DNA of 62,921 nucleotides, counting the filler, from Reticulomyxa filosa (lineage: Eukaryota > Protista > Foraminifera), in NCBI GenBank assembly GCA_000512085.1. It is 11 parts of 11 records of this genome, joined end to end, with 100 filler letters (N's around TTAATTAATTAA, not from the genome) between each part and the next. Parts side by side here need not be neighbours in the genome. Positions count along the whole stretch, not along the records: positions 27,253 to 48,708 come from ASPP01006551.1; 10 more parts are not named here. One strand, 5' to 3'. The notes beneath the pieces were generated by a model. It was not told the DNA's origin, made no database searches, and saw only the letters and a program-made list of their open reading frames with translations. The stretch's first letter is position 1. Each line of letters begins with the position of its first letter. Below, piece after piece: positions 8,409-48,708 of this stretch. Both the position numbers and the translations under genes were made by a program.

Positions 8409-10741
8409 AAAAAAAAAAAAAGTAAGGGTCACTTTTGTACGTATACGCAAAATTGGACTTAAATAACTTTGACTTCAATTGGTTCGTTGGCATTTTTCTT
8501 TTCTTCTTCGTCGTTGTTTTGCTCTTGCAATGCGATATCTTCTCTATTTTATTTTATTTTATTTTTTTTTTTTTGTTAAATGTGTTGAATTTTTCGAGAA
8601 ACGCTTATTAAAATTTTCTCTCCTTTTTCTTTCCTTCTTTCGACAGAGGGGACGTATAACCAAACTTGAAGGTATCCCAAATAAGATCAATGGTGGCCAT
8701 TAAGTCGGTCACATGAACCAATTTTTTATCTTCCACATATAACGTTGCATTACTTAATTTCTGCACAACTACGCGAGGAAGAGATTTCGCGTACTGCACA
8801 ATGTCCGTCCAAGCCCTTTTTTTTTTTTTTTTTTTGTAGGATTGACATACCCACATCATCACAATATATACATGTGTATATATTTTTTTTTTCAAGGTTC
8901 ATGCAAATGTATTTATTAAAAAAATAGATAAACTCTTTAAAAGGAGCATATCCAGTTTTGTCTTTATCAAGCCTTTGGAAAACCTGACGGATCACATCGA
9001 TATCTTCTAAGACAATATACTCCGAAGTTGCGACATCCAAGCTTGCTTTCTCTTGTTTCGGTTGTAATGTCAAGTCAAGCGTCCAAATCAAATTTAAATC
9101 TTCTTCAGACGCACTCGAGGCTAGGTGCAATTATTTGTCAATTATTATTTTTTTATTATCGTCGTGTCAGAGTTAATCAAAGAAATACAGAGAATAAAAG
9201 AAAACGGATATATTGGCTCCATTTTTTTTTTTGGGGGGGAGAGGGGGAAAAGAGATTATTCTTACCCATGGGTCGCATCAATTCCATTGTTTGGCTCTTC
9301 GTGTCTTCGCTTTTGCTCTGAAATCTCACCTCAAATGTTTCATTTATTTTGATAATTGTCAAAAACAAATCATTCCATTCGATAGTGCAATACACCTCGC
9401 CGGGTGTTACCACAGGTTTGATTATGAACGTATAATAAAAAGAACTTACATTTGCCATTTCGATGTCGTCCATTAATTGTAGTGTTTCAAACTATTTGCA
9501 ATTCATTAATTTTAAAAAAAAAAAAAAATTAACACTACACTAAATTGTAAACGTATACATAAAAATGGAATATATAGGAGGAGGTCACTAACTTCTTGTC
9601 CGCTGCGATCGCGAGACTTGTAAATTCGTAAGTAGGATTGTGAATCTAAATGCAAAATCTGGAATTTGAAGAGGTCTTTGGGAATAAACGCAAAGGCAGT
9701 GCTTAAATGCCTTAATTTACAATGTGCTGTGAATCCATAGCCTTCAATTTTGCTTAAAAAATATGAATTTGGAGCACGTATACATGCAACTGGAGGGACG
9801 CCGCCCGTGGCAATAAATGATTGCCTCGGTCTTCGAACTGTTCAAACACGATTTTGTGTGTAAGCATATCTTTGTTTTTTTTTTAAAAAAAAAAAGAGAG
9901 CCACTCAGAAAAACAAAAGATAAAAAAAAATCCCAAAACGAAAGCTAGCACGCGGAGCCGCTATGGAATTTCGTCTGCTCTTTGCTTCGGGGCCTTCGGC
10001 TGCTGATTCTGGTGCTTCGTTGACTTTGTTTTCTGTTGTGTTTGTTGCTTCGACTGCTTCGTTCACGACTTCTTTTGCTTCTTCGGCCTTGACCTCCGAC
10101 TGAGGCTCTACTTTTGTTACAGGCTCTATGATTTGGATAGGCGCTTGCGCTTCTACCACTTGAACTTCTACTATTTGAGCCTCTACTACTTGAGCCTCTA
10201 TTACCTGAGTTTCTACTATTTGAGCTTCTACCACTTGAGTCTCTGCTGCTTGAGCCTCTATCACTTGAGCTTCTACTACTTGAGCCTCTACCACAGTTGG
10301 TATGGTACACGCTTTGTCTGCTTCATTCTCTGAAACCGTGCTGATTTCCTCTTCTTGTGTGTGTTGGATTGCTGACATTTCGAGTCGAGGTGCTGTCGTT
10401 TCGATTGTAATTATTGTTTCTTTTCGCTCATTTGTCGTTTTTTGTAGTTCGTCTTCATGTTGAGGCTCGTTTTGATTTGGAGCCATTTCTTCCACTTTTA
10501 CTGCGTTGGGTTGGTCCCCCTCGTCTTTTTTTTCCAACAACTCAACGATGGCTTGAATATGTTCTGATGACATATCAACGGCTGTTGGAGTTTTCTCTTT
10601 GGCTTCTTCGGTTTGATCTGCCCTAGGGGAAGATGGCTCATCCGGAGCCGGTTGGATAGGGTGGCCAACTTGAAGGTCAGACATTGAACTTTGTTCTAGA
10701 AGGCTTGGAGTGTGAGACATTAACTTACTTGTCAATGACAA
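8409..10741 (-). CDS. Multi-exon protein with an acidic repeat N-terminus and an EF-hand (possibly disrupted)
   Basis: 278-aa Glu/Val-rich first exon, and EF-hand IRQVFQRLDKDKTGYAPFKEF at ~8935-9000. One in-frame TAG lies at 9646-9648. Confidence 0.55.
10144..10295 (-). repeat. 15-bp coding tandem repeat (VVEAQ)n, ~10 copies
   Basis: Recurring TGAGC(C/T)TCTAC(T/C)ACT units on the + strand. Confidence 0.9.
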
Positions 10742-14204: not shown

Positions 14205-15413
14205 ATGCAAATGACAATAAAATACAGTGAATTTTTTCAACGATAAGAAAAGCAAGACGAAGAAATTCAAAGACATTACAGGCAATCTCTCTGATTCAAC
14301 GGCACAAAAAATTCTCGAAGCGAATGTTAATAGTTTTTCTCATTTTATTTTTTTTTAGAAACTTATGGAATATTCTTTCCTTCTTAAAAAAAAGCTTTTT
14401 TGAAATGGAGAGGGGAGGTTGTGCTTTATTTTACGTATGGAAACATTACGTGCACAAACAAATGAACAAAAAGTAGAAATGGGACGTTCAAGCAGCATTG
14501 AATGATTTCTTCAACAATGCAAGTAAGTATGAAGGTGAAAAGAAAATCGTTTCCAGTGCGCCAGACAAGATGACGACACTATTTGATAAATACGCAGATA
14601 AAGATGACAAAGAGATCATGTCTGAAGCTGGAACGCTTCAATTTTTCAAAGATATTGGCATAAACCCCAATGGTAAAAAACTAACAAATTACACACTTTT
14701 TTTTTTTTTTTAAGGAGAGAAAGTGAGAACGAAGATAATATGCAAAAAAAAAAAAAAAAGATCTAATAGTGAACGTATAAAAAAAAAAGGGTTTGAGACA
14801 TTAGCTGTAGCTTGGCTGTTAAATTCCAGTGAAATGGGACTGATCCAACGCAAAGAGTTTGTAGACGGGTTTTCAGGACAAGCGTGCCTTTCCACTCAGG
14901 ATATCAAATCAGTGGTTAAAGCGAAACTTGCTTCGCTTGAGACAGAGGTTCAATTTAGACAATTTTACAAGTTTTGCATTATGTTTATGTTATATTGGTG
15001 TTGTTCTGTATACGTTGTATATGCATATATTATGACCCGCACGTATGTTTTTTTTTAATCCTCTTTTTTTTTTTTTTTTTAAAAAAAAAAACTACACATA
15101 TGATATCATAAACGAAACTAGATGGGTGTTTCAACATGTAAAAGAAGATGAGAAAAAAAAGACAATTCCAGTCACTCTGGCAGTTCAAGTGTGGAAAATT
15201 GCATTGGGTAGCAAACAAAAAGAACTGCCTTTGTTAGAGAAGTGGATTGCTTGGTGCGAACAGTCGAAAGATGTTAATGTTGTTAACAGAGATGTTTGGG
15301 AACAAGTTTATGATTTTTTGAAAGAAACTAAAACTTTGAACACTTATGATGACAGTGGAGCGTGGCCCGTCCAGATTGACGAATTTATTGCATGGGCTAA
15401 AGAACAACATTAA
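14205..15413 (+). CDS. DCN1: DCN1-like cullin neddylation E3 (UBA-like plus PONY), 4 exons
   Basis: AQKILEAN|KWDVQAALNDFF (UBA-like), LFDKYAD...GTLQFFKDIGINP, VAWLL..SEMG...EFVDG, FRQFYK|WVF and RDVWEQVYDF...YDDSGAWPVQIDEF. Confidence 0.93.
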
Positions 15414-27252: not shown

Positions 27253-27284
<32 letters not shown>

Positions 27285-30268
27285 CAATAATAACAACAAT
27301 AATAACAAGAACAATAACAATCCTCACCATTTGGTCAATTTGCCAAGCAATTTGAGTAGTATTGCTTCGTCGGGCAAAGGAAGCAACAGCATAAAAGACC
27401 GCGACACACATGAGAAAAACAAGGACACGGAAAGCAGGTCGGCCCAACTAGGAAATGTCTCGTCTCGAGAAGATAACGCAAACAAAGAGCAGGAACAAAA
27501 ACAAGAACGACAACGAACAAGCATCGGCGAAATGGCGAATGGCAAAAGCAATCAAAGTAGCAATCATAGCAGTGCCAACGCCCGCAGTTTGGACGAAAGA
27601 ACGTCAAGTGTGCGAAATCGAGAAGAGGAGCGAGACGAGTTGTCACCACTGCCCAAAGACAGTTTCGCCAATTTGGGATTGACGTATCCTCAAAAGCCGA
27701 ACAAACACCATGAGAATGACCATGAAAAAGTTTTGCCAAAAAAAAAAAAAAAAAAAAAAAAATTATTTGTTTTGTTTTTATTAATTTTTTTGTTTTTTGT
27801 TTTTTATGTTTTAGACAGTGAAAGAAAAGCCAATAATACGACCACTGCCACTGAGCATTAGCAATGAGAATGAAAAAGCAGGAGGAGATAATGGGAAAAA
27901 GACTTCGCCCATATCGGATGGTTCGTCTTGCAGTAGCTGTGAAAGAGAACAGTTGGACCCACGAAGACCAAAGAAAGAAAAAAAAGCAGACAAGAATTTG
28001 AAAACGGGCCCTCGCAAGTGTCACGCGCATCAAAAACGGCGGAAAACGGTTGGTGAGGGGATCTATTCATCGAATCGTCATCACAGCAGCAGTCACAGCA
28101 ATTCTATCGATCACGGCGATGGACGAGAGGCCCATGGCGGGACGACGGATAACAACCGTTCAACGACGACAAGTCTATTGTATGAGACCATGGACGAAAA
28201 TATGTATCGCTATGTGTTTCATCGCATTCATCATAACAAAGCGACGTGGAAAGATGTATTCGATGATCCTGACTTGTATTATACGTTGTTGGCAGAATAT
28301 CCGGCCAATGGAAAGTTCATCGACTTCATTTATGATAGCGGCGATAAAGGGCAAATTCACCCATTTTCCTTGTACTTCCAACAATTGGAAAATCCAGTGT
28401 TTGAGTTTGGCCAAACAGATGACTTGGACAAACCTTTCCAAGTAAATCTCGAAAGAGAACAGGAGGAACAAAAAAAGGCCATCGATACAACCGATTCCAA
28501 AAAAAATACACAAACGATGGACGCCAGAGCATTGGCGAAGAAAAACTATTATGGAAATGCTAACGCTGGTAATGCAGATAGCAATGAGGAGGAAGAAGGA
28601 AAGGTTTCTTTTGTCACAGACGTTCAGGCCAATCAAATCCAAAACGATATGTACAGAAGTCCTTCCATTTCGACATTGGGACCTTCCGCTTCCATTTGTG
28701 TTAGTGTTGACGACGAAAACAATGATCACGGAGATGCTGATGAGGCATTGCACCGCTCCAACATCGTTCGTTCTGACACTGTCGATACTCCGTTGCTAAA
28801 CAAACTGTATCTGGACTTGTGTCATATTCGACGCAAGTACGCGGTTTTGATGGCCGTCCATTTGGACTTACTCAAAGAAGTCAAAGAAAAGAAAGAAGAA
28901 GCTTCCAAAAATCATCGTACTATTGCCGACTTAGAAAAACAGTTGGATCGTGCGAATATGCGGTTGAGAGACGCCGGAAAGACTGAAAAAGTTTCTTTTT
29001 TTTTTTTTTTTGCACCAACTTTTTTTTTTTAACATACTGTGCAAAAAAAAAAAAATTAATAATAATAATAATAATAAAGGTTCTTCGTGACAACTTGCAA
29101 ACCCATCAAAAGGGCTTGCAGCAAATGAAACAACGGAATGAACAGTTGGAAGAGACATTGCAACAATACAACCAGCAAATCATATCTCCGCAAGTTAGTG
29201 AAGCCAGTGGTGTACGCTCGCGAACGCCAAGCAATACATATTTTAAACGTGGAAAGATAGCGCAATCCAACTTACATCGCACATCAGTATTAAGTACTGT
29301 TGCTGTTGTCGGCACTGGAACTAGTCGAGAATCTCTAGTTTCGTTCGTTTGTTTGTTTGTTCGTTCGTCTGTTTTACGAATATCTTTGAGAGCCTACATA
29401 AATAAAAAGGGGAAGGAAAATAAAACAATAACAAAAAAAAAAATCCCTTTTTTATACGTTTGTTCTCCAAGATTCTGTGGCCCATGTCTTGTACCTACCT
29501 ATTGTAATATATACATTTACACAAATGTATGTGTACACGTGCATAAATGTGTAAAAGAATGAAAGAAATAATTCGAGCAGCGACGTGACGGGCAATGAAC
29601 TAAGTCAAATAATATCTCCATTGGCTCAATCGTCGCCGTCTCTCACATCCAATAACGCGAAATATCAGTTGCATGAAGAAATGGAAGTTGAAGTAGAACC
29701 GAATGATGTACTTCATCAGCCTCGTTCTCGTGATAAACGAGCTACATCTCTGCTTATTCGCAACCTCAGAAATGGTTCCCAGAAGGAACTACTGGAATCG
29801 ACAGCTAATGCTTCCGTCACTGGTGATGCCAGCGGGTCATCGAGAAGACAGAGTACTTCTCCAAATGATTCCTTCGCCTCTCCACAATATAACTGGCAAT
29901 CGGGGGATTCTCACCGACGTCTGTCCTTGCGGGCCACCTCTCAGGCCTCTGCGTCTATGGAGGATCTTTTCCATCGAACTGATCGACCGAAGCACTTTTC
30001 CAAAAATAGTGAAACGAGCCCTGTCATCAGTCCATTGGCGGATTCTATTACAAATGTACATTTCAACAACAACAATCATAATAACCGCAGCTCCAACCTT
30101 CGTGGTGTTGCTGGGGTTCCCAAAGGAAATGCCACTACCAATCGTAGCACTAATTCTACTGGCAAACAATTACTGAGATCACAAACAGCTGGCACACAGC
30201 AATACTTTTTTCAAAATAGCAAAGCCAAACGATCTCGGTCAGCACGTCCTTCCTCTGGGAATCAATAG
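27253..30268 (+). CDS. Large Ser/Asn-rich protein with a coiled coil, multi-exon (3' part)
   Basis: Long ORFs joined in frame by introns 27730-27814 and 28991-29079. Coiled-coil segment LLKEVKEKKEE...LEKQLDRAN...LEETLQQYNQQ. Confidence 0.7.
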
Positions 30269-31129: not shown

Positions 31130-33087
31130 ATTACAATCAAATCGGAGGTGCTCACAAACACACAAATGCTTATTTTCGGAAGTGGAGAAAGTAGAGTTAT
31201 CTTCAGAAAAACAGCTTATCCAAAACTTTGACAAGCATCAAAACTCACAAGGGAAAAAAGAAAATACTATTTTTCATCTGTGTGCAAAAGAATCATTCAA
31301 TAGAATTTGAGTAATTTTTTTGCAAGATTCAATTTGAAGTAACGAATTAATGACCCATCTATTCAAACAAAAAGTTAAGATGTTTTTGAAAATGAATAAT
31401 GTCTATATCCACACATATTCAAAAAAAAACAAACCTAAGAGAGTCCAATTGCAAAGCAGTGGATTGAACAAATAATTGTTTTGACAGTTTCAAATTTTCA
31501 ATTTCCTTTTGCAAAGTATCAATCCGAACTTGACTACTTTGAATGGTCCCTTCCAACTGGTTTAATAATTGATTCCTTTCCTTGTGCTTTTCCTCTAATT
31601 TTTCAGATAATTTTTTTTTCCCATTCTTGGTTATTCTTGATGATTTCATCTTCGATCATCGACTCAAGACTTCGTTCCATGTCCGTTATTTTTTGTGTCA
31701 TTTCATTTTCCGTATCTAAGCTGACACGTCTCCAGGTCTCTTTTTCTTTCCTCAATTTCGTTGAGTACTCAGATTGGATGTGTTTTCGGACCTGATCGCT
31801 CAAAGATGCTACTTCATTTGCGTGGCTCGTCTTCAACGCTTCGATTTCCTTCAAGTGGTTTGCCTTCACTGTTTTCAGTTCTTCTTCATATTTGTTCTTC
31901 AATGTTTCCGTATCTTCTATTCTCAACACGCCAATATATACATATATATATATTGTACATCAAAAATATGTCATATTTTGCCACTATTTTTGTGTATTCT
32001 CTTCTAAGTAAATAAATAAAGACATATATGCATATATATACAGAATATGTATTATGCAAATGATACCGTCAGAATGAGCCTCATCAGAAGACTCTTCTTC
32101 CAATGTTTTTTCATTTTCGTCCTCTTTTGTCGAACTAATAATACGGTCCCATGATTCCAGTTCTATCCATCACAAACCGTTTATACTATGTGATACACAT
32201 GCATATGTACGTATGCATATATGTATGTTCACGTAATGTAATATATGTGCATATGCAAGACCTGCAGTAATATGCTGCGACAATCTTCGAAATTGCTTGC
32301 CGATTTCTTCACCTTTCTGTTCATGTTTTTGTTCATTTTTTTTTTGAAGAGAGAGGGAGAGAGAGAAGACAAAAAACAAAGATTTTTTAATGACTTAAAA
32401 AAGAACTCAAACCAAAGATTTCAATAATTGTTCATATTGATTGAATTCTTGTTTCAATTGCTCCAAGTCTTGTCTTGACGGCAAACGTGTCACTATTTGG
32501 CTTTTGCTTCGTCTCAGCTCTTCGATCACTTCTTCATTTTTGCTTGACATTAGTTTGATTATTTGGTCTTTCTTTTGAAGTGAGGTGTTTGTGTTTTTCA
32601 GCTTTTCTACTAAGTCATTCTTTTCGTTTTGATATTGTCTCAGCGTTTGTTCTAATTGCGCTATTTTACTTTCCAATTCTCCTTTTTTTTTTTTTTTAAG
32701 AAGGGGGGGGGAAGGTGTAGCATTAAAAAAAAAAAACTTGCTTTGGAAATTATTTTGTTTATAACATAAAAATTAAGGCCCATATAATTTCAAACTGTAT
32801 TTTTGACTTTTTTGTTGCTCTCATAATTTTGATTTGAAATTTCCTGGCTTTTTTGATTTTCTTTCAATTTTGTCAAATGGTCCCGCAAACGATTGTTATC
32901 ATATTCGAACTGCTCAATTTTCGATTTATATGTGCCACCAATGGTGTGCAAATCACCTTCCAGGATCTCCTTTTCTTTTAGTAATCTGTCCTTCTGCTCT
33001 TTCAATGTTTTGCACTCATTTCGCAATTGTGCTAATTCCTCTGTTGTTCCAACCCAGCACTGACTTTGTTAAATTACTATTTTCCAT
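31130..33087 (-). CDS. Long coiled-coil protein, multi-exon
   Basis: Successive E/K/Q/L heptad-rich ORFs at 32790-33026, 32407-32676, 31603-31929 and 31419-31649, the last two joined by a homopolymer frameshift. Confidence 0.65.
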
Positions 33088-35156
33088 TTATCTTAACATG
33101 TTCATACAAAAGAAAAACATAAATTAAGACCATTCTGCTTCGAAATCACTTGATCTTGAGAAATTGCAGAGCTACTCATTTTTCAGCTTTTATTTTGCAT
33201 CCCTCCAAAAACAAAAACACAACAACTAGTTTCATTCAGATACAGTTTTTTAGTTTTCTTTGTAATGCACTACTGGCACTGCCTATGGTGAGACTAAAGA
33301 AATACAATATTTTCTCAACAGTCAATGTTACCCACATTATAAGATTATAAGTTGATAAGATTTTTAGCATTATATAATATCAACACAAAACAAGTTGTCG
33401 ACAATGAAAAATAAACAGTTATTTGAATTTAATCTATAATTATAAATTACGAGTTTGAGTTTGCAAAACATTGATCTTAAATTGATATATTTATATCAAT
33501 ATCAAATATTCGTAAAAATACTAGCAAATTAGTATAGCAATAATACTACAATAAATTGCGATGCAGAGAGATCACAGAAAAAAAGAATTATCTGCAAAAG
33601 CAAAATTAGACAAATTCCAGTCATTTTTTTTGTTACTCCGTTTAATTTATGAGATACGCATATTTAAATTTCAAGAATCAATACGTAATCTAACACTGTT
33701 GTACTGTAAGTAATACTAATCGGAACAATACGCTATAACTTGCTATGTGTTTATAATCAAAAATATTATAATCAACACCCAGTTCAATAACACTACATTC
33801 ACTTGCGTCTCGAAACTGATAGTTTTAGCATATCGGAAACACGAACAGTTTGGATATACAAATCATATAATAATCAAATTTCACTTCTTACACGTACCCA
33901 AATTTTTCAACTGTTTGTTTTTTTTAAAGTAACAAATTAGCAAAAGCAAATTTATGCTTTAGTTAACTTGACGAAATGTTTAATTTAAATGACATAATCA
34001 ACGATTAATATTCTATATACGTTTTGACAAATAATTTTGTGACATTATGATATTTTGATCATAACAGTGTAGTGATATATGAGTCATAACTGACTCCAGA
34101 GTTGTAATAACTCAACTCATAAAATAAGACACTATTTGTTTTCTTTTTTTTTTTTAAATTGTCTTGAACGTTTTTCGTTAGCTGAGCTCTTTCTTGCGTC
34201 TCTCTACAACAGCACGATATTGGACCAATTTTCAATGAAAACGAAACAACAGAACGAAAAAAAAAGAAAAAACATTTAAGACAAAAAATACAATAAATGT
34301 CTTCTCTTGCAGCATGTATTTCTTTTTTTAATATATTTCTAATGGAAGAGTACTGAATTCGGATTTGCAATATATTTCAGTATCGAATGTAGACTAATGT
34401 TGAATTTTACTATTAATGGAAGTGTATATCTTCTTGAAAGAAGTTAGTATCATATTTTCGAATCTGGAGTATTATAGTTAGTTCATTTCACTTAATTTTG
34501 TCAAGTTAGTGACTATAAAAATTAAACATGACATATCTTTGCAATTTGCTTGAGATAGAAGCTTCCAGAACAGTTAAGTAATAAAAAAATATATATATCT
34601 CTTTTGGATTATTTGACTTAAAAAGACTTGTTTTACTGTCAATATTATAACAAAATTCATCTAGCAAGGAGTATTTAACTCTTTCATCGTCTTTTTTAAA
34701 AAGAAATAATTAGTATTTTCTTTAAAAACAAAGTGACTTTTTTTCGATAGACTCAGTGTGTATACGTCAAATCAGGTTCTTTTCCAAAAAAAGTTCAAAA
34801 TAAATCAAAAAAGAACAACAAAAAACGAAGAAATGACCAAAAATAAAAAAATGACTAACAATAGCTTGCTGAAACTACAAACGATTAATTGATTTTTGTG
34901 TACTGAAAAGCAAGACAATTATGACTAACGACAAAGACAACATTATATAAAAGAAAATCTATGAGTTGAGAAATTTATTGTAGAAGCATTAATTTTTAGA
35001 TTTTAGCAATTATGAAAACGAACTATCCCGCTTGAAAGATTATAACATACTTGATTCAGAAGAAAAAAACTTGTTTTACATTCGGATATTCGAACATATG
35101 ACATGTCTATATGAGACTTGTAAGCTGTATCAAGTCACTTTGTGGTCATAGTGACG

Positions 35157-36361: not shown

Positions 36362-38793
36362 TTAAATAGTTGGAGCATGTTCCACAGCAACGTGTGCAAT
36401 CAAGTCCATTCCGCTTTTGAAAGCTTTACCGCACATGTCACATTTTTGCAAACAGTGTAAATTGTAGTCTTTATTGACACCAGTATTATGCTGATTGCCA
36501 GCGTTTGTGTTATCACCATGGCCACTTTCAGAAGCAGCATGTTTCAAAATCTTGGAAGCCAAGTGTTTTTTGGTAATATGTTTGTTTAAGTTACTCAAAA
36601 TGGTGTATTTTTTATTGCAATGTGGACAAGAGTATGGTTTGTTTGTTTTGGAATTGGACGACACGGACAAAACGTCTTTCAACATCTGTTCGTTATTGCT
36701 ATTGTTTTCTTCAATCATCAAACCCGAAACAAAGGGCTGTAAGTTTTGACAATTGTGATTATTCTCATCAATCTCATTCCTAACAGATGACGGAACGTTA
36801 TTGCTCTCAACATGGTGCGTCCCCCAACTGTCGTTTGAAAGATTGCTCTCTTTTGAGTGTTTTTGAGGCAACAAATGAAAAAAGTGTGTTTGTGCCAATA
36901 ACCCTGGCAAGTCAACTTTGTGAATTTGCAACAAATGACTGAATAGCGACTGATAGTCTGCGAATCGGTCATTGCAAGTGATACACTGCCATGTATTATC
37001 ATTGGAGTTATAAAAGTTTGAAAAAAACCTGAGTTGTTCAATATGGAGGTTGGTTTGATTGTTGCTATTTTTCTGCATTACTATTGGCGTGTGACAGTCC
37101 AAAAATGAAATGCGAGTATCTTTTAAACTCTTTCCAATGTTCGGATTACTATCTTTTTTTTTAATAGGAGAGTTTATTGTGCCACTGTTTTTTTGCAAAC
37201 TGAAAGAACTCAGAGTTTTTCTGCTAGCAATGTCCTCTTGGCTTATAAAACAAGTTTTCAAGCTGGTTGATGGTAGTTGATTTTGTTGGGATTGCAAAAT
37301 GGAGAGACTATGGTTGGTAAGTGTTAAAGGCAAAAACACTTTGTGCACGATTGTCATATGTTCAACGCACGTGAGCTGACACTTAGTTAAAAAATTGCAA
37401 TAAAGACAACGATATGGGATCCAAGACGTGAACGACGCTTTGGCCTTTGTCTGGATTGATCCATTCTCACTGCTTGTACTTTCTCCTTTAAATTTGTTTA
37501 ATGTTGATATATCTTGTTGTAATAATGGCTTCAAAAATGTTACACGAGCTAATATTTCTTGTCGATGAACTTCAATGGAAACTCCTTTTTTTTAGTACAT
37601 ACAAACATTTTTCTTTACCTTGTCTTAATTTAATTTTATTTATTTATTTTGTTTTATGTTTTGATATTACCCAATGACTGCAAAGTTTTGTTGTCCATTT
37701 GTTCTAGCAAACGCCCACTAACTCCAGATCGGGCAAACTCTGTAATATAGCATTTGCCAGTAGGAAAAGAAGTCAACCATAACAAGACATCACTGACCCC
37801 CCAAGCGTGTAATGACGCCGGCTTTCGATTGACAGAGGAAGAAGAGTTGTTACCACATGATGTAACAATGGATCCTAGTGGATGTTGTTTCGCAGTTGTC
37901 AGAATTTTGGAGTGTAAAGAATGTAAGGGTAATTTATTATATTCAATTATAGTTCCAAGTATATTTGATCCAACATTATTCGATAGTTGCTTATATCTAT
38001 GCAACGCTTGTTGATATCTTTCATGATCTTTTTTTAATAACTTATCACTATTTTTATTGTCAATCATACTTTTTGTTATATCATCATAATTATGACTAGA
38101 CTGACCTTGAGAAACTGGTGATGTGTGGGTTGCACCAATATTTTTATTTATATTTATTGTTCTGTCTGAAAATTCACTATTTCCTTGCCCCAATGGAATG
38201 CAGTTTATTGCCATAGAGCAGCTCTACTTTTTTATTTGTTATAACTCTGACTCATCTTATGTTACAATGATCCGCAAATCACTCCAAAACACACCAAAAA
38301 AAAACAGAACTGAGTTTGCCAGTCGCAAAATTTTATGGGGTGGTGGATGAATATAGTCACTGGTTATGTGTTTGTAGCTCCTTGGATCTCCCTCGGCACT
38401 TGTTATCGGGCTGTTTACTGCATATGCTACTATTCGCTTGCAGCAATTTTTAAAAACCTTCTTTCGTTTTTTACCGATGATTTTATTTTCGTTGCTGGTT
38501 TTTTTACACAGCAACAAATTTTGAATTGAGTTTTCTTGCGGTGTTTAGAAAAAATTTAGTTAAACCGTTTGTTTTTTGTCAGCGACTTTTTTAAAGTACC
38601 CTTGTGAAAAATCATCCTCGCTGGTATCACCGTCGTCACTAGCATTTTCTAATTTTGGTGATATCATATATGTATGGATGTTGTTTTGCTTTGCTTTTGT
38701 ACTAGCTATAGTATTAGCGCCACAATACTGATTTTGTTCTGGTGAAGACACAGGTTCGAGTTTTACTTTCTTCAAAGAATCCATATTCAGCAT
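36362..38793 (-). CDS. SAM-domain plus four C2H2 zinc-finger protein (putative transcription factor)
   Basis: WGVSDVLLWL...FARSGVSGRLLEQM...LQSLG|VSIEVHRQEIL (SAM). Fingers CLYC..H..VH, CITC..H..IH, CPHC..H..KH and CDMC..H..EH. The 5'-most exon join is uncertain. Confidence 0.85.
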
Positions 38794-39653: not shown

Positions 39654-40912
39654 TTACGATGTTTGAATAATATTGACATCATTGACCATGGACACTTGTC
39701 TACTGCAAGAGCTAGTTGATTGTGTGCCCAAGGGGCGAAAAATGCAACGCTTGCACATGTGTCGATAAATCCAGTCGCCAAAGTCGAGCGACGCAAGTAG
39801 GAGAATTCCATTGAAGAACCCGTCCCAATAGGACAGCAATGTTCCAATACCGTAGCTGGAAAGTGACACAGCAAAGGCGAGCAGTGAGCTGGAAATTGCA
39901 GCGACGGCAATCCAGCAAGCTTTTCGTAAGGAGTACGTAAGTCGTTGATTATTTCCCCATATATCCTCACTGTCGTGTTTTGCTAAATAGTGCAGTCGGA
40001 TCACATATTGATAAGACAGAGCTAACATTAGTATGACAATATATACACCTGCTGCAGACAATGCGATAATCTCTGCGTCAAGATTCTCAAAATTGCATTC
40101 TTTTTTTTTTTTTTTTTTTTTTTTTTTTGTGTTTTGTGATTGGGTGAAATTTAAAAAAATAAATAAATAAATAAAAATAGTGAGTAGAGAGAGAGAGAGA
40201 GAGATGGGAGGGACAGGGATGTTACAGAAAATACATCGAAACGAATAGAGATATGAGGAACGGTCCTTTGGATTAAAAAAAAGAAAAAATCCCAGACTTC
40301 GGTTGGCAGTACACAAAAATTTGCAGATTGACCACTTGCAAGTAAAAAAAAAGCAATGGTCGCTGCAATGAAGCTAACAACAAATCCAACCAGAAATATC
40401 CATTGAAATTGCTTGCTTATTTCCAAAATGCTTTCACGAAACACCACTTCCAATCGAATGTACAAAAACAACAACAAAAGGTGATAGTATGAAAACGGCA
40501 ACCAGAGTCTGTACATAATTTCGATTCGACATTCCAATACTTTCATTGAAACGTTCGAACTTTGGTACCCTGCCATCATTGAAACATAACGCCTAATTTC
40601 CATATCCAAGTCAATCACCAAAATCAAATGATAACTCAACAACGAAAAACATAGCCATCGGTTTTGCACTTTCTTGAGATACAGACACTGATAGAAAGCA
40701 TAACACAGAATCACCAACTCCGCAATTCCCAGCAATATCACAAAGATTGTCTAAATCCACAAACAGACTGTCCGTCGGTACGTGCGCAAAAGTATACCAA
40801 CCCTCCTAACACTTTTTTCCCAATAAACACATATTTATTTTTACTCGTGTACACTTACCGCGGTCCCAAATGGAAGACGCTGGACAGTATCCAATTGTGG
40901 ACAAACTTTCAT
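39654..40912 (-). CDS. Seven-transmembrane GPCR-like protein
   Basis: Seven hydrophobic segments after splicing, a Cys before TM3, LFLYIRLEVVF at the end of TM3 and DGFFN in TM7. Confidence 0.65.
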
Positions 40913-41460: not shown

Positions 41461-42907
41461 ATGGCCTATGTTCCGATTGTTTTTGTATCTGCTTTTATAT
41501 TATGGGTAGTAAGACAAGCTTTCAAGACTGTGATGGCAGTGTTTGGACACACAGACGATTATCCGGACAATTTTGATTACGCTCATAATCGTAGAAAAGA
41601 ATTATCGCAATTAGACGTAACCAATCTTCAAAAAACGCCCGATAATATCAAAGTTGAACAAGGCTATCACGAAAATGAAGAAGGTCACTTGCTGTTTTGG
41701 CGTTGTTTCATTCCTACCGACGTGAAAGCCCAAACAATGATATGTTTTTGCAATGGTTTGTATTATTGTTTGGTTTTTTTAAAAAAAAAAAGGCTTGTTA
41801 AAAAACGCATTTTAGCAAGTTAAACAAAAAAAAAAAATGGAAACATGGAAAGAGGCCAATATTTGATGGGAGGCACGGAAAGATTAAGAACATATTAAAA
41901 ATAAAACAGGATTTAACGGACATTGCGAATGGATCGAATATGACATAGGCCTGGAGTTGAGTAAGCGTGGATACATGGTGTTCATGTACGATCACATGGG
42001 ACATGGCCGAAGTTACGGAAAGTGGATGGCAATAAATGACTTTGAAATTCTAGTTGATGATGCAATTTGTATATTTGAATTTGGCAAGAAAAAGTTTGGG
42101 CATAGTGAGATGAATTACTTTTTGGTAGGAATGTCCATGGGTGGTGCTGTGGCTCTGCAAGTGTCACGAAAACAAGACTATCGCAGTGCCTCAGGCATAG
42201 ATAAAAATATCGAACTACAAACATTCAATCAACGATGGAATGGTTGTTTGTTGGCAGGTGATACTATTATTAGCATTTTTAATTTTTTTTATACACACAT
42301 ATAAATATATGTATATGCGTATATGCCTATATGAATCGAACTTTATTTGACTGGATTTTTGATTGATTGGAGGAATACAGCACCAATGGTTCAAATCCAA
42401 CAAGAAAATGTCACAAAACCATGGCTTATTACACTATTGTCAGTGCTATCGAAGGTAATCCCAGACGCACCATGGGTTCCTTCGAGAGATTTGCGAGACT
42501 TTTCATGCAAAGACAAAGCAATCATTAAATATATCAAATCCAAACCTGTAACTTGGGAAAAAAATCCAAGACTTGGCACAGCTATGCAATTCTTGCGACA
42601 ATGTCAAGATTTGCAAGAGCACTTGGAAGACATTCATATTCCTTTGCTTATCATGCACGGGAAACAAGATCGAGTAACAAGTTATGAAATGAGTATTCAA
42701 TGCTATGAAAAGGCTGGAAGTAAAGATAAAGAAATTAAAATTTATGAAAATGCATGGCACTTTCTATTTGTTGACCAATGGAAACAACAAGTCTTTGATG
42801 ACATCGATGCATGGATATCACAACGACAAGGGCACATATTCCGTGCCAGTCGATATCAAATGTTATCTTTGCAAGAAAAAAAACAACTTCAAACTCAAAA
42901 AAACTAA
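41461..42907 (+). CDS. Monoglyceride lipase/lysophospholipase-like alpha/beta hydrolase (Hydrolase_4), 3 exons
   Basis: DHMGHGRSYG, nucleophile elbow GMSMGG, catalytic Asp in HGKQD and His in YENAWH. N-terminal hydrophobic anchor. Confidence 0.9.
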
Positions 42908-43252: not shown

Positions 43253-45106
43253 TTAACGTTGGTCTGGTTCGTCGTCAGTGATCATGCTTGCCCCACGTAT
43301 GGTAATGGAAGTCATTTTATCAGTCTCGATTCCAAGTTGGGCAGCTCTGTCGTCGGCCAACAAAAGTTTGGTTTTGTCATCTTCACTACCACCTCCCTTA
43401 TACTCGATTTTATGTTTAATTTTGTCGTGTAATTCAGGCACTTGGGTGACGTTACTAAAAAATTGGTCATCCAATATCTGTGGATCTTCAGGTCCGTCGA
43501 AGATCAAAAAGAAAGTGACAAGAGCACCCAAAATGCTAACAATGCCGCAAAAGATGAAAGTGACATTGGAGCCATAGGCATCCTTTAAGGGATTGAACAT
43601 CGCGGCCCCCACAACAGCGCCCAATTTTCCCGAGGCAGCTGCAATTCCATGGCAAGTTCCTCGAATCTGAGTAGGGAAAATTTCCACAGGCAAGACGAAT
43701 GTGGTTGTATTGGGTCCAAAGTTGGAGAAAAAGAATGTCAATGCATACAGGATGACAAACAGCACCAATTGTTTTTTGATGGTGTCCCAGATTATTCCAA
43801 TCAATAAAAATAGTATTGCCATTATCACAAATCCTTGGATTTGCATTCGTCGTCGACCAATGGAGTTGATGGTGGCAACAGCAACAAAATATCCAGGCAA
43901 TGCACCTTTTGGTATTTTGTTTTTGCTTTTGTTTTTGTCTTACGCACAATGACATTGAGCGCACACACACACAACAAACCTAAAGCCAAAAACACATTTT
44001 TTAGGGATACATCAACCAGGTCATCAGAATCGTTTCCATTAGAGCTGACAGTGCTGAGGACGGAATCACTAAAGATGCCCTGAGCATAAAACACGACATC
44101 AAATAAAAACCATGCCACACTAGTCCCCAGCAACTCCTTCCAATAGAACTTTCCAATCAACTTATATTTATCTTGGATTGTTAAATGCTGATGCCAATTT
44201 TGGGATGCATTTGCCCCCTTTGAAAAGGCCTTTGATTCTTGCATTTTCATTCGAAAATAAAATATTCCTTTTTTTTTTTTTTTTTTGTTTTGTTCCCATT
44301 TAAATTGAATATTTATTAATCTTTTGGGAAGAAGGGGGAACCCGTTAAAAAAAAAAAAAAAAACGAACCAATACAAGGTACGGTTCCAATAAAAAATAAA
44401 GTTCTCCAAATGATATTCAAGTTTTCATTTTCATAAGGTTGATTGCGAGCATAAAGCTGACATAAAAGGTTTGCACTAAATGCGGCCAAGAAATTTCCCA
44501 AACCCTGCAAGGAAAATACCATCGCTACATTCGGTCCACGCTCCTTTGGTTTGTCCACGCTTTGTTCACTGGCACTGGCTGCTGCCAAAGGGTATTCTGC
44601 CCCTATGCCAAATCCTAATATTAATCTTGCTATTATCAACCACCATACCAATGATACTGAGCTTTCACTGCTATCCGTTGGAACCGCTTTTTATTATTAT
44701 TATTTTTTTTTTTGTCACTATTTGTAAATTTTTTTTTTTTTTGTGCAGATAAATATAGCTATTGAAAAAGAGGAAGAAAAATGTACAAACAATAGATCAG
44801 TTTCCTATCTCTTCTATCTTTTTAAGTTTACGTACCAGTGGTACATAAAATACCCCCAATGATCAACAGTGAACAAGACAAAATCATCATCAGACGTCTT
44901 CCTAGTTGATCTGCCAATGCTCCAATTATCACCTGGCCAAGGACGGCACCTATAAACACTGAAGTTGAAACTAATGTCTCTCTTGACTTGTACGCGTTAC
45001 CGTAACGATCTTCCATCACCACATTTACCATGTTCATCACGAACAATTGGTAAGCGTCATTAAACAGACCTAATCCTTTTACTAAGAGAGCCATTGGACC
45101 TATCAA
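43253..45106 (-). CDS. PHO84/PHT1/GIT1-family MFS phosphate or glycerophosphodiester transporter, 4 exons
   Basis: GLFNDAYQLF, GALADQLGRR, RLILGFGIGAEYPL, WFLFDVVFY and FFSNFGPNTTTFVLPVEIFPTQIRGTCHGIAAASGKLGA. Confidence 0.92.
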
Positions 45107-45578
45107 ATGTTTTTTTTTGCCTGTCCCTGTGAAAACTTTTTTTTAACTTAAAAAAGCTAACGGTTTAGGGAACAACCTAGTCGGAACGTTGTGTTTAAAG
45201 ATCAAAACAAAAATGTGCATAAAAAGAGAAGGTAAATTTTTCATTTTATAATACTGCTTCCAAAAAAAAAAAATGTATTTTTGGCAAATTTGAAGAATGC
45301 ATATCCAAAAAGGAGGTATGAAATATTGTGCTTGTTGCTCCTCCTTTGCAAACTAAAACAAAAAAGGAAGCATTTAAAAGTGATCAACACATAACAAAAA
45401 AAATATGAAATAAATAAAGCGAAACATTAATTAAACTGAAGTAATGAGTCTTTTTTTTTTATCCGACGCCTCCATGCCCTTGTTCAAAATGGTTCATATT
45501 TTTTTTTTTAACGGATCAAAAAAAAAAAAAACAAAAAAAGAAAGAGAAAGGAAGAGAAAAAAAAAAGAATTGGATCAA

Positions 45579-46430
45579 CTAATGTTTTTCTTTATTAAAA
45601 TAAAGTAGAATCTTCTTGAAGACAACAGGAAGCAAAGAAGCCAAGGCAAGTGCAAGAAGCATAACAATGTGTTGATTGGACAACACTAAAGTCCTTTGCT
45701 GTAGTGAGTCTCTTGAAATTTGCTGAATGGCTTGGCCCATATGGACATAGATGAAATTGGCAGGAATCAATCCCAAAAAAAGTGGCAAAGAGAAAAGTCC
45801 AGTAATTGATTTGAAAAATTGGACACACTAAATTGATGAACCAATTGGGGAGCAGTGGAGTGAGTCTCAAAAACAACAGGTAATAAAAAATATCTTTCGA
45901 ATTGGAATTTTTTGTCGGAAGTATATTTTCTTGAAATGTTTTTACATAGGTGGGGAAAAAATAATACACCACGTCATGTCCATAACAATACGATAAGCCA
46001 TAACATGCTGATGCTCCTATTGTGCTGCACAGTGTCACTAAAACCAGTCCTAGCCACACATTAAACAACGCCCCACTTAAGATACTTAAGAATAATGTTC
46101 CTGGAATCGCAAGTGTTTGCAATACGATATACACAGTACAAAATGCTGTGCATAAATGACTGAAATGCGATAATTGATATTTTGTTAATGCATTCGCTAC
46201 ATTTTCGACATCATTCAAATTTCGTGGAATCCGTATGCTCTCTTTCTCTTCCCTAATTTGTTTTGTTTCGTTCCGTTGCATTTTCTACACTTAAACCGTT
46301 TTTTAAAAAATTTAACACAATACTCAACTTGGGAAGCAATGACCACAGAAACACGACGATACTGAGAAAAAAGACAAATGCAAAAAAAATGCACAAGAAA
46401 ATTGCATTTGCTCTATTCATTTAATTATTT
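45579..46430 (-). CDS. TMEM41B: TMEM41/VTT (DedA, SNARE-associated) membrane protein; one homopolymer frameshift at ~45775
   Basis: YIVLQTLAIPGTLFLSILSGALF, FLRLTPLLPNWFINL and ATF/GLIPANFIYV. Confidence 0.88.
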
Positions 46431-47419: not shown

Positions 47420-48708
47420 ATGGCTGATCAAAGGAAAAAGTTTATGCGTGTGAAACGTATTGCGCAAGAACTGAAGGAAATGGCGAAAAACACTAATTAC
47501 GACGTACGTGAACAAAACCTCTTTTAACGCGTGGCTTTTTTTTTTTTTTGAACAAATAGAAATGAAATAAGACAATTAGATAACCAAAACAAAAGATTTA
47601 CTTAGAAAAAGCGAATGAGTTTGATACCGTGCTTGTGGTAATGCCTGGACCGTCAGAGAGCCTTTACGAAGGTGGTTATTACATAATCCGAATCCACTTT
47701 GGTCCTGATTATCCGTATAAATCACCCTCTGTTGGCATTCTAAACAAAATATATCATCCCAACGTTGACTGGGGTATTTTTTTATTATTTATTTATTTAT
47801 TTTTTTTTTGCTGTATTCAGTTGTAATTGAGCTTTGGTGCCCCTTTTTGGATTTTTCTGTTTTGGTGCAAAGGGGTCATTGTATGTGTGCTTTTTTTGTT
47901 TTAACAGCACAAACACGCACCTCAACATACATAAAAAAAAAAGATAATAATAATAAACTAACATAAAATAAATAAACATATAAATGTTTATATACACACA
48001 CATATAAAAAATATATATACATGTATAACAATGACATTTAACAACATGGAAAAAAAACAAGGCAGCGGAAGTGTGTGCTTAAATGCGCTAAATCATGACT
48101 GGAAAGAGTGTTATACATTGTACCAGATGATGACGACCTTATTACCTTATTTACTACGTACCCCAAATGGTAGTGACCCATTGAACCAAGAAGCAGGATC
48201 GATGTGTGAAAACTCTCCCAATGAATATGCATCACGTGTGAAAGAAATGGTGAAGAAATATGCACTTTTGCATCAACTGGAACCACTGTTGAAATCCACA
48301 CACGACTGGAGAACAAAGCAATCATACCGTTGTTCCGCCACTTCTTCCACTTCTTTTTTTTTTTCTTCTTCTTCTTCTTCTGCTTCTGCTTCGTCATCAA
48401 AAGAAAAATCAGGGAACGAACACGCAGCTGAAAAAAAGCAAAGCGCAATGGGAACAAAACATGCGTCATCGTCATCGCCCACCAATCAAAAAACGCAAAT
48501 GGCGAACGACAGTGATGACGGCATCGATGACAACGCTTTATTAGATTCTTCCGACAGTGACAACGACAACAACAAGGACAGCAAAAACAAGAACAGTAAA
48601 GCCAAGTCCAATGCCAGTCCAATGAATGGTGTCAGTCGTGTCGCCACAGACGGTAAAAAATTTATTTTATGTAAAACGAACTTAATTAATTTTTTTTTTT
48701 TTTTTTTT
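47420..48708 (+). CDS. UBE2H: Ubiquitin-conjugating enzyme E2, UBC8/UBE2H-like, with a Ser/Asp-rich C-terminal extension
   Basis: [10 protein letters not shown]...[24 protein letters not shown]|SGSVCL (active-site Cys)...[19 protein letters not shown]. Confidence 0.88.

What the first reader, a model, noticed from the sequence alone, without database searches (positions are those of the whole stretch)
28991..29079. Hairpin-type intron: T-tract at the donor, A-tract at the acceptor, no polypyrimidine tract
Seen: this phase-0 intron restores the frame and reads GTTTC-T16-GCAC...GTGC-A13-TTAATAATAATAATAATAATAAAG. That is a perfect 17-bp stem with a purine-rich 3' end. A purine-rich acceptor, usually with T-rich sequence upstream, recurs in introns 14673-14789 (DCN1), 41756-41909 (lipase), 44268-44368 (transporter), 47774-48061 (E2) and 49993-50090, and at ~9865-9935, ~32681-32810 and ~56211-56341. 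Established: the canonical 3' splice site uses a polypyrimidine tract bound by U2AF65, and structured (GT)n/(AC)n introns in teleost fish can splice without U2AF2. Inference: this genome may use a structure-defined, possibly U2AF-independent, intron recognition mode in which U/A arms juxtapose the splice sites. This is the best candidate here for an undescribed system.
Basis: partly seen in the sequence, partly recalled or inferred. Interest (0 to 1): 0.85.

Follow-up and report, generated by a model that had tools for sequence, protein, structure and literature searches.

The report
Hairpin-forming intron in a foraminifer gene
A genuine 89-base intron in a gene of the foraminifer Reticulomyxa filosa can fold into a 17-bp T/A hairpin and, like most neighbouring introns, has an A-rich rather than pyrimidine-rich 3' end; the hairpin looks more like a by-product of repeat-rich DNA than a new way of splicing.

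Summary
The piece is contig ASPP01006551.1 of Reticulomyxa filosa (Foraminifera). 28991-29079 is a GT..AG, phase-0 intron with a T16 tract after the donor, an A13 tract, an (AAT)n-AAAG tail and a perfect 17-bp inverted repeat (28999-29015 / 29039-29055; -14.3 kcal/mol, z about -3).

A paralogue on another contig reads straight across the junction, which confirms the splice sites. That paralogue has no intron there but shares the next intron position. The intron is also flanked by a 9/10 direct repeat. It is therefore paralogue-specific and probably young.

Among 14 curated introns of the contig, the 20 nt before the AG are 56% A and 34% pyrimidine, against 37% and 48% upstream of random intergenic AGs (p about 0.001).

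The structural part is weak:
- Only 3 of 14 introns (27730-27814, 28991-29079, 44268-44368) have a helix that closes the intron.
- Nine of 14 fold no better than shuffles.
- Own arms beat swapped arms only marginally (p 0.03 and 0.15).
- T-run and A-run co-occurrence is not significant.
- Similar T..A inverted repeats occur outside introns.

No RNA run was listed, and U2AF independence could not be tested. The best reading is an ordinary spliceosomal intron made of simple repeats, in a genome with atypical A-rich acceptors.

The parts
28991..29079 (+). The intron of the finding (A2): 89 nt, GT..AG, phase 0
   Evidence: Sequence. The junction peptide is uninterrupted in paralogue P0002/L002. 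There is no internal AG.
28996..29011 (+). T16 tract, starting 6 nt into the intron, just past the region that U1 would pair with
28999..29015 (+). 5' arm of the perfect 17-bp inverted repeat (T13 + GCAC)
   Evidence: I2; minimum-free-energy structure
29016..29038 (+). 23-nt loop containing a second T11 tract (29020-29030) and a TTAAC branch-like motif, with its candidate branch A 47 nt from the 3' end of the intron
29039..29055 (+). 3' arm of the inverted repeat (GTGC + A13)
29056..29079 (+). Single-stranded AAT-repeat tail ending in AAAG. It is A-rich, has no pyrimidine tract, and contains a TTAAT branch-like motif 20 nt from the 3' end.
28988..28997 (+). Upstream copy of a 10-nt direct repeat spanning the 5' junction (AAAG-T-TTCTT)
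   Evidence: Matches the 3' junction at 9 of 10 positions. None of 182 swapped junction pairs reaches 9.
29076..29085 (+). Downstream copy of the direct repeat spanning the 3' junction (AAAG-G-TTCTT)
27815..28990 (+). Upstream exon of the host gene (no Pfam family; function unknown)
   Evidence: ORF; Pfam blank; residues 273-391 are 62% identical to P0002
29080..29337 (+). Downstream exon. It ends at a GTTTCG donor at the same place as the GTTTAT donor of the paralogue.
27730..27814 (+). Intron A1 of the same gene: A25 near the donor, then T-rich with a normal TTTTAG acceptor (the opposite order). An imperfect A/T helix closes positions 13-76.
44268..44368 (-). Intron F2 of the phosphate-transporter gene: GTTCG-T17 ... 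A18-G. The 17-bp T/A helix closes the whole intron, and an inner GTTCCC/GGGAAC pair is also present.
   Evidence: The exon junction is contiguous in homologue L003.
43906..43979 (-). Intron F3: GT-rich 5' end and A/C-rich 3' end. The spliced peptide matches L003 exactly.
44687..44835 (-). Intron F1: CT-rich tract in the middle, then A14, A11 and an AAT-repeat tail ending in AAAAAG
32682..32795 (-). Putative intron B1 (T12..C9..A15-G, 14-bp T/A helix next to the acceptor). The boundaries are uncertain because the reading phases conflict.
47774..48061 (+). Intron H2 of the E2 gene: T-rich 5' half, A-rich 3' half, acceptor A8-CAAG
   Evidence: Pfam UQ_con positions 25-76 and 78-139 abut across it.
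41756..41909 (+). Intron E1 of the lipase-like gene: GTTTGT donor, adjacent T7 and A11 runs, A-rich acceptor
37585..37670 (-). Intron C1 (SAM/zinc-finger gene): A-rich throughout, ending in TACTAAAAAAAAG. With this intron removed, the coding length equals the 588 aa of the deposited model.
40751..40858 (-). Intron D1: conventional GTAAGT ... GGATTTAG, with no A-rich tail (counter-example)

Best explanation
28991-29079 is a conventional GT-AG spliceosomal intron in a Reticulomyxa filosa gene of unknown function. It is paralogue-specific and probably young. It is built almost entirely of simple-sequence tracts: T16, T11, A13 and an AAT repeat. The 17-bp helix exists because a T tract and an A tract sit in one short RNA, with a 4-bp GCAC/GTGC clamp setting the register. 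T-run-then-A-run inverted repeats are a general feature of this genome's non-coding DNA, so the hairpin is most likely a by-product of how this DNA arises (insertion or duplication plus slippage) and not a required splice signal. Shown: the intron, the helix potential, its absence from the paralogue, the flanking direct repeat, and the A-rich acceptors. Inferred: splicing uses the normal machinery. A weak GTTTNT-type donor would be helped by the U-rich tract just downstream. A UUAAY-type branch site would be used. The first AG after an AG-free, A-rich tail would serve as acceptor. In this scheme any pyrimidine tract lies upstream of the A-rich tail and not next to the AG. The helix may shorten the distance between the 5' splice site and the branch region but is not essential.
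For: Organism and contig. Junction confirmed by the paralogue. The paralogue lacks this intron but keeps the next intron position. A 9/10 direct repeat spans both junctions, and 0 of 182 swapped pairs reach 9. The closest homologue of the transporter (L003) lacks all three R. filosa introns and has three others, which indicates fast intron turnover. Homopolymer runs of 9 nt or more number 49 in 21.4 kb, inside and outside introns. Perfect inverted repeats of 14 bp or more number 5 against 0.18 expected, and 2 of the 5 lie outside introns. Nine of 14 introns are no more structured than shuffles. The arm-swap test is marginal. T-run and A-run co-occurrence is not significant. Introns with the opposite order or conventional form exist in the same contig, one of them in the same gene. 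The sense and antisense strands of A2 and F2 fold about equally well, as expected for a DNA-level palindrome. A-rich, pyrimidine-poor acceptors are significant. Fully pyrimidine 15-nt windows are present in 6 of 14 introns but end 16-77 nt upstream of the intron's 3' end.
Against: Introns are somewhat enriched for structure beyond composition. Five of 14 reach p<=0.05 against 3 of 65 intergenic windows (Fisher p 0.004), although the rank test is only p 0.06. The two longest inverted repeats of the contig (17 bp) both lie in introns, and both start right after the donor hexamer. Both carry extra G/C-containing complementary blocks beyond the homopolymers. T-run followed by A-run is seen 5 times and the reverse order never (binomial p 0.06). 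No RNA data were available to show how these introns are actually processed. The sample is one 21-kb contig.
Confidence: 0.6

Rival explanations
1. Structure-assisted splicing in a subclass of introns. In about one fifth of R. filosa introns, a U tract just after the donor pairs with an A tract near the acceptor. This zips the intron ends together and reduces or replaces the need for a polypyrimidine tract and the U2AF large subunit, as (AC)m-(GT)n repeats do in zebrafish.
For: A2, F2 and A1 each have a helix that closes most or all of the intron. In F2 the helix runs from position 6 to the base before the terminal G. A2 and F2 rank 0-1 of 26 in the arm-swap test. F3 has a GU-rich 5' end and an AC-rich 3' end. 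Acceptor regions lack pyrimidine tracts. Introns are more often structured than intergenic windows (Fisher p 0.004). A tested precedent exists: PMC4691745.
Against: Most introns with A-rich acceptors (C1, E1, F1, H1, B2) have no bridging helix, so the helix cannot be what compensates for the missing tract. The F3 minimum-free-energy fold does not bridge the ends. Co-occurrence of T and A runs is not significant. All-A/U helices of about -14 to -18 kcal/mol are weak and would compete with proteins that bind U and A tracts (inference). The same repeats occur outside introns. In F2 the helix would bury the A of the acceptor AG and the tail next to it.
Confidence: 0.22
2. The intron is a copy of a mobile, introner- or MITE-like element. 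In this reading the inverted repeat is a pair of terminal inverted repeats, the flanking direct repeat is a target-site duplication, and the element brings its own AG while the duplicated target supplies the GT.
For: The intron is present in one paralogue and absent from the other. An imperfect direct repeat spans both junctions; it includes GTT(T)CTT at the start of the intron and GTTCTT at the start of the downstream exon. There are inverted-repeat arms near both ends. Introners with target-site duplications and terminal inverted repeats are documented in many eukaryotes (PMC9860276).
Against: No sequence-similar copy was found among the other introns or elsewhere in the 21-kb contig. The introns share a layout but not sequence, and a shared-looking C/T motif is not repeated. 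The arms are mostly homopolymer, which slippage alone can make. The introner papers I checked do not mention Rhizaria or Foraminifera in their main text. The rest of the genome could not be searched.
Confidence: 0.12
3. It is not an intron. It is an assembly or sequencing artefact, or an insertion that disables a pseudogene.
For: Homopolymer lengths in this assembly are unreliable. No RNA evidence was available.
Against: Exact GT..AG ends restore the frame. Both flanking exons stay open and are 62% identical to the paralogue right up to the junction. Many similar introns in conserved genes of the contig are confirmed by domain continuity.
Confidence: 0.03

Closest known systems
Teleost (AC)m-(GT)n bridged introns, which splice without U2AF2 (Lin et al. 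2016, PMC4691745)
   Same: Complementary simple repeats sit near opposite ends of a GT-AG intron and can form a bridging helix. Many such introns lack a polypyrimidine tract (61% in zebrafish). They are a subclass beside ordinary introns.
   Different: Here the repeats are U and A homopolymers, which give weak all-A/U helices, and not GU/AC dimers. Co-occurrence was not significant in 14 introns. A-rich acceptors also occur without any helix. No biochemical or RNA evidence exists. The organism is a rhizarian protist.
Euglenid nonconventional and 'intermediate' introns (PMC6221363, PMC4770533)
   Same: RNA secondary structure brings the two exon-intron junctions together. The 'intermediate' introns combine features of the conventional and nonconventional types with a stable secondary structure (abstracts).
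   Different: Nonconventional introns lack GT-AG borders and U1 complementarity. The R. filosa introns examined all have GT..AG, and only 3 of 14 have an end-closing helix.
Introners and other transposon-derived introns (PMC9860276)
   Same: The intron is present or absent between related genes, has short flanking direct repeats, and has inverted repeats near its ends.
   Different: No family of sequence-similar copies was found. The arms are low-complexity tracts.
Yeast intron stems that bring the 5' splice site close to the branch point (Goguel and Rosbash 1993 and others, cited in the introduction of PMC4691745)
   Same: In A2 the helix loops out 57 nt. That leaves 8 nt before the helix and 24 nt after it, including a TTAAT branch-like motif.
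   Different: The yeast stems are in long introns with strict branch-site consensus. Here the intron is only 89 nt, so shortening it is hardly needed.
Fungal introns with the pyrimidine tract upstream of the branch point (my recollection of Kupfer et al. 2004; not checked here)
   Same: Six of 14 introns have a 15/15-pyrimidine window that ends 16-77 nt upstream of the intron's 3' end, followed by a pyrimidine-poor stretch.
   Different: The stretch before the AG is strongly A-rich (56% A). I do not know of this being reported for fungi. Branch points are unmapped here.

Membership tests
U2-type GT-AG spliceosomal intron | GT at the 5' end and AG at the 3' end | tested here: met
U2-type GT-AG spliceosomal intron | Removal restores a conserved reading frame | tested here: met
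   The paralogue P0002 reads ...DAGKTEKVLRDNLQ... without interruption.
U2-type GT-AG spliceosomal intron | Polypyrimidine tract between branch point and AG | tested here: not met
   The last 30 nt are 73% A, 27% T and 0% C. Across the contig the last 20 nt are 34% pyrimidine.
U2-type GT-AG spliceosomal intron | Branch-site motif (yUnAy) 10-50 nt upstream of the AG | tested here: inconclusive
   TTAAT lies 20 nt and TTAAC 47 nt from the 3' end. In AT-rich sequence such motifs arise by chance, and no lariat data exist.
U2-type GT-AG spliceosomal intron | Spliced product seen in RNA | not testable with these tools
   No RNA run was listed, so read laying could not be used.
Bridged simple-repeat introns independent of U2AF2 (zebrafish type) | Complementary simple repeats at opposite intron boundaries that form a stable helix | tested here: met
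   Met for A2, F2 and A1, using U and A tracts.
Bridged simple-repeat introns independent of U2AF2 (zebrafish type) | The two repeat types co-occur within introns more than chance allows, and not elsewhere | tested here: not met
   Fisher p 0.58 for a T-run of 10 or more with an A-run of 10 or more. T..A inverted repeats also lie outside introns. Arm-swap p values are 0.034 and 0.15. The sample is small.
Bridged simple-repeat introns independent of U2AF2 (zebrafish type) | Splicing requires the repeats and does not require U2AF2 | not testable with these tools
   This needs minigenes, extracts or knock-down.
Euglenid nonconventional introns | Non-canonical, variable borders without U1 complementarity | tested here: not met
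   All 14 introns have GT..AG.
Euglenid nonconventional introns | Stable structure that juxtaposes both junctions | tested here: inconclusive
   F2 fits fully. The A2 helix stops 8 nt and 24 nt short of the two ends. Most introns do not fit.
Introner / transposon-derived intron | Many sequence-similar copies in the genome | tested here: inconclusive
   None were found within the 21-kb contig.
Introner / transposon-derived intron | Target-site duplication and terminal inverted repeats | tested here: inconclusive
   A 9/10 direct repeat spans the junctions and there is a 17-bp inverted repeat, but both are low-complexity and the arms are not terminal.
Introner / transposon-derived intron | Present or absent between related genes | tested here: met
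   It is absent from paralogue L002, which keeps the next intron. Whether this was a gain or a loss could not be decided.

The most novel reading that the evidence does not exclude
Reticulomyxa filosa, and perhaps foraminifera generally, recognises 3' splice sites without a pyrimidine tract next to the AG. The tail is A-rich, and any U/C tract lies further upstream. In a subclass of about one intron in five, a U tract just after the donor pairs with the A tract at the acceptor to zip the intron ends together. This would be functionally analogous to the U2AF2-independent (AC)m-(GT)n introns of fish, but built from homopolymers and found in a distant eukaryotic supergroup.
Probability: 0.2. Interest if true: 0.75.

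Novelty: new variant of a known kind. Interest (0 to 1): 0.45.

Why it matters
How the 3' splice site is recognised is thought to be broadly conserved: branch point, then pyrimidine tract, then AG. A free-living eukaryote whose introns mostly end in A-rich, pyrimidine-poor tails would be a natural test case for how far that scheme can drift and what replaces binding of the U2AF large subunit. I found no paper in the library that describes intron 3' ends in foraminifera. Published gene models on this contig miss or misplace several of these introns, so the feature also matters for annotation. The paralogue-specific intron with a flanking direct repeat adds a candidate case of recent intron gain in a lineage with very fast intron turnover. 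The hairpin itself, which was the headline of the finding, is the least secure part.

Tried and rejected
RNA evidence: the look-up of sequencing runs listed no run. 'None was listed' does not mean none exists.

Rfam gave no match on the piece.

I replaced it with coordinates read off the ruler.

Exons were searched separately by reference.

Introner-family idea: aligning five introns shows a shared layout (T run, C/T tract, A run) but no shared sequence. A C/T motif that looked shared between F2 and B1 occurs only once.

Length co-variation of T and A tracts: only four introns have both, and homopolymer lengths are unreliable, so this was not evaluated.

Boundaries of B1 (32682-32795) and of a second intron of the membrane-protein gene (ending near the A28 run at 40101-40128) could not be fixed because the reading phases conflict. 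B1 is kept as low confidence and the other is excluded.

No R. filosa paralogues were found for the lipase or the transporter. Helix conservation between paralogues could therefore not be tested, and the only paralogue of the host gene lacks the intron.

The R. filosa genome paper and the foraminiferal actin-intron paper are not held. Whether R. filosa has U2AF or SF1 orthologues could not be checked: one paper tabulates its spliceosomal proteins only in a figure.
Full report
**Source.** A protein encoded in the piece is recorded on contig ASPP01006551.1 (21,456 bp) of assembly GCA_000512085.1. A published paper names that assembly as Reticulomyxa filosa, a naked freshwater foraminifer in the Rhizaria. 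Window position 27253 is contig position 1. The piece is AT-rich: about 40% GC in coding parts and 23-35% elsewhere.

**Observation.** The sequence is as described.
- GT lies at 28991 and AG at 29078-29079.
- T16 lies at 28996-29011, then GCAC.
- A 23-nt loop follows, with a second T11 tract.
- GTGC plus A13 lies at 29039-29055.
- An AAT-repeat tail ends in AAAG.

The inverted repeat 28999-29015 / 29039-29055 is 17 nt and perfect. As RNA it folds at -14.3 kcal/mol. That gives z -2.7 with 3 of 200 dinucleotide shuffles as good, and z -3.7 and -3.35 in my own shuffles.

**Is it an intron?** No RNA run was listed, so I used comparative evidence. An exhaustive profile search with the upstream exon found one relative, P0002 (ETO09134.1, 'hypothetical protein RFI_28253, partial', R. 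filosa). It is 62% identical. It is encoded as one uninterrupted ORF on the 667-bp contig ASPP01024327.1. It reads ...DAGKTEK-VLRDNLQTHQKGL..., which is exactly the peptide made by removing 28991-29079 in phase 0.

That contig is genomic and not a cDNA copy. Its ORF ends at a GTTTAT followed by non-coding AT-rich sequence. This is the same alignment position as the window gene's next donor, GTTTCG at 29338. So the two paralogues share the downstream intron position but differ in whether the hairpin intron is present.

The two junctions of the hairpin intron carry a 10-nt direct repeat: AAAG-T-TTCTT at 28988-28997 and AAAG-G-TTCTT at 29076-29085. They match at 9 of 10 positions, and none of 182 swapped junction pairs reaches that score. 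Together these points suggest a gain by insertion or duplication in this copy. A precise loss in the other copy cannot be excluded.

**Other introns of the contig.** I fixed 14 introns by coordinates. All have GT..AG, and 11 are high confidence. Support is as follows.
- The E2 gene's 288-nt intron is bracketed by Pfam UQ_con positions 25-76 and 78-139.
- The lipase and transporter exons abut in their profiles.
- The three transporter introns interrupt sequence that is contiguous in the closest homologue. That homologue is a metagenomic eukaryotic contig, L003, at 55-65% identity. It has three introns of its own at other places, with ordinary T/G-rich 3' ends.
- The SAM/zinc-finger intron reproduces the 588-aa length of the deposited model.

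Donors are weak and varied: GTTTCT, GTTCGT, GTTTGT, GTACGT, GTATTT, GTAATA, GTGATA and GTAAGT.

**A-rich acceptors are real.** In the 20 nt before the AG, the 14 introns average 56% A, 25% T and 34% pyrimidine. Upstream of 625 AG dinucleotides in 6.7 kb of intergenic DNA (both strands) the values are 37% A and 48% pyrimidine. The Mann-Whitney p values are 0.0009 for A and 0.0002 for pyrimidine. Eleven of 14 introns have A>T there.

Windows of 15 nt that are entirely pyrimidine exist in 6 of 14 introns, but they end 16-77 nt upstream of the intron's 3' end. The typical layout is therefore donor, then a T or C/T tract, then an A-rich stretch of 15-60 nt, then AG. An AAT-repeat tail ending in AAAG recurs in 28991-29079 and 44687-44835. 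Two introns are conventional at the 3' end: 27730-27814 in the same gene, and 40751-40858.

**The structural hypothesis.**
- Folding against shuffles: z is -3.7 for the finding's intron. It is -2.3, -2.0, -1.9 and -1.6 for four others (41756-41909, 29338-29557, 44268-44368 and 43906-43979). It lies between -0.65 and +1.2 for the remaining nine.
- Intergenic control: 65 intergenic 100-nt windows average z +0.1, and 3 of 65 reach p<=0.05. Five of 14 against 3 of 65 gives Fisher p 0.004. A rank test gives only p 0.06.
- Arm swap: each intron's 5' half was paired with its own or another intron's 3' half. Own pairs average -13.8 kcal/mol and swapped pairs -11.5 (permutation p 0.034). With 45-nt ends the values are -9.9 and -8.7 (p 0.15). 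Only four introns (27730-27814, 28991-29079, 44268-44368, 43906-43979) rank near the top.
- Bridging helices: the minimum-free-energy fold closes most or all of the intron in three cases. These are 27730-27814 (A25 against a T-rich tract, the reverse order), 28991-29079, and 44268-44368. In the last, a T17/A18 helix runs from position 6 to the base before the final G, with an inner GTTCCC/GGGAAC pair.
- Co-occurrence: a T-run of 10 or more and an A-run of 10 or more in the same intron are not associated beyond independence (4 both, 1 T only, 5 A only, 4 neither; p 0.58).
- No helix in many cases: several introns with A-rich tails have no helix at all. Whatever allows splicing without a pyrimidine tract next to the AG cannot, in general, be the helix.

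**A genome-level feature.**
- The contig holds 49 homopolymer runs of 9 nt or more. Twenty lie in the 1.8 kb of curated introns and the rest elsewhere.
- Perfect inverted repeats with loops of 3-150 nt are enriched over block-wise dinucleotide shuffles: 10 against 4.1 at 11 bp or more, 5 against 0.18 at 14 bp or more, and 2 against 0 at 17 bp or more.
- Three of the five repeats of 14 bp or more lie in introns. Two do not: 34139-34270 in a 3-kb gene-free stretch, and 45396-45506 across the transporter's start region.
- A neighbouring T-run followed by an A-run occurs five times, and the reverse order never (p 0.06).
- The pattern T(n)...A(n) reads the same on both strands, so it does not in itself point to an RNA-level function.
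- The sense and antisense strands of 28991-29079 and 44268-44368 fold about equally well.
- Aligning the T/A-tract introns shows a common layout but no common sequence. I found no evidence for a mobile intron family within this contig.

**Mechanism.** I take the intron to be spliced by the normal spliceosome.
- The U tract begins six bases into the intron. It could act as a linear U-rich enhancer for a weak donor. This is inference from what is known of U-rich sequences next to weak 5' splice sites in other eukaryotes.
- A UUAAU motif 20 nt from the 3' end, or a UUAAC motif 47 nt from it, could serve as branch site.
- The AG is the only one in the intron.
- The helix would leave 8 nt before it and 24 nt after it. 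It might modestly help pair the ends, but an 89-nt intron hardly needs that.
- I put this reading at 0.6, a functional bridged subclass at about 0.2, and a mobile-element origin with a family of copies at about 0.1.

**Comparison with known systems.**
- The nearest tested precedent is the zebrafish (AC)m-(GT)n intron class. Those introns bridge their ends, often lack a pyrimidine tract, and splice without U2AF2 (PMC4691745).
- Euglenid nonconventional introns also pair their ends but lack GT-AG borders (PMC6221363, PMC4770533).
- Introners explain presence/absence polymorphism together with target-site duplications and terminal inverted repeats (PMC9860276). The two introner papers I checked do not mention Rhizaria.
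- I found nothing in the library on intron 3' ends in foraminifera.

**Limits.**
- The sample is one 21-kb contig with 14 introns, curated by frame and homology and not by RNA.
- Homopolymer lengths are unreliable. A VTT-domain gene breaks frame at a T7 run at about 45775-45781.
- Branch points and U2AF status are unknown.

Noticed in passing
window 45585-46281 (- strand), break at the T7 run about 45775-45781: An intronless gene with a VTT (TVP38/TMEM41/DedA) domain changes reading frame at a T7 homopolymer. Pfam VTT_dom positions 1-103 of 123 end exactly at the break. This is probably a homopolymer length error in the assembly, so tract lengths such as T16 and A13 should not be taken literally.
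   Followed up: partly
window 41461-42907 (+): The lipase-like gene (Hydrolase_4) is deposited as two separate genes of 233 aa and 173 aa. The 123-nt intron 42258-42380, which has a purine-rich acceptor, was apparently not modelled. Pfam positions 14-99 and 109-237 lie on either side of it.
   Followed up: partly
window 47420-48700 (+): The deposited E2 (UQ_con) gene model starts only at 48031, inside the 288-nt intron. It misses two upstream exons (47420-47503 and 47596-47773), which carry UQ_con positions 25-76.
   Followed up: partly
L003 1500-2900 (ENA ERZ893790, k147_6080219): This 35%-GC eukaryotic metagenome contig carries the closest homologue of the phosphate transporter (55-65% identity). 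It has three introns, none at the three R. filosa positions, and all have ordinary T/G-rich 3' ends. The organism is unknown.
   Followed up: partly
window 27253-48708, list: Neighbouring long homopolymers show an order bias. A T-run followed within about 125 nt by an A-run occurs 5 times (twice outside curated introns). An A-run followed by a T-run never occurs. The cause is unknown.
   Followed up: partly
window 40101-40128 (- strand transcript: A28): A 28-nt A run lies inside the second intron of a multi-pass membrane-protein gene, preceded by a long CT-rich tract. The acceptor could be the AG right after the run or one 14 nt further on. The phases conflict for the first option, so this intron was left out of the statistics.
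   Followed up: partly
window 27253-27320 (+): The contig begins inside an AAT/AAC repeat that reads as a poly-asparagine run in the frame of the host gene's first visible exon. The gene is cut off by the contig edge.
   Followed up: no
window 45396-45409 / 45493-45506: A 14-bp perfect inverted repeat containing non-homopolymer bases spans the annotated start codon region of the transporter gene (5' leader against the first intron).
   Followed up: no
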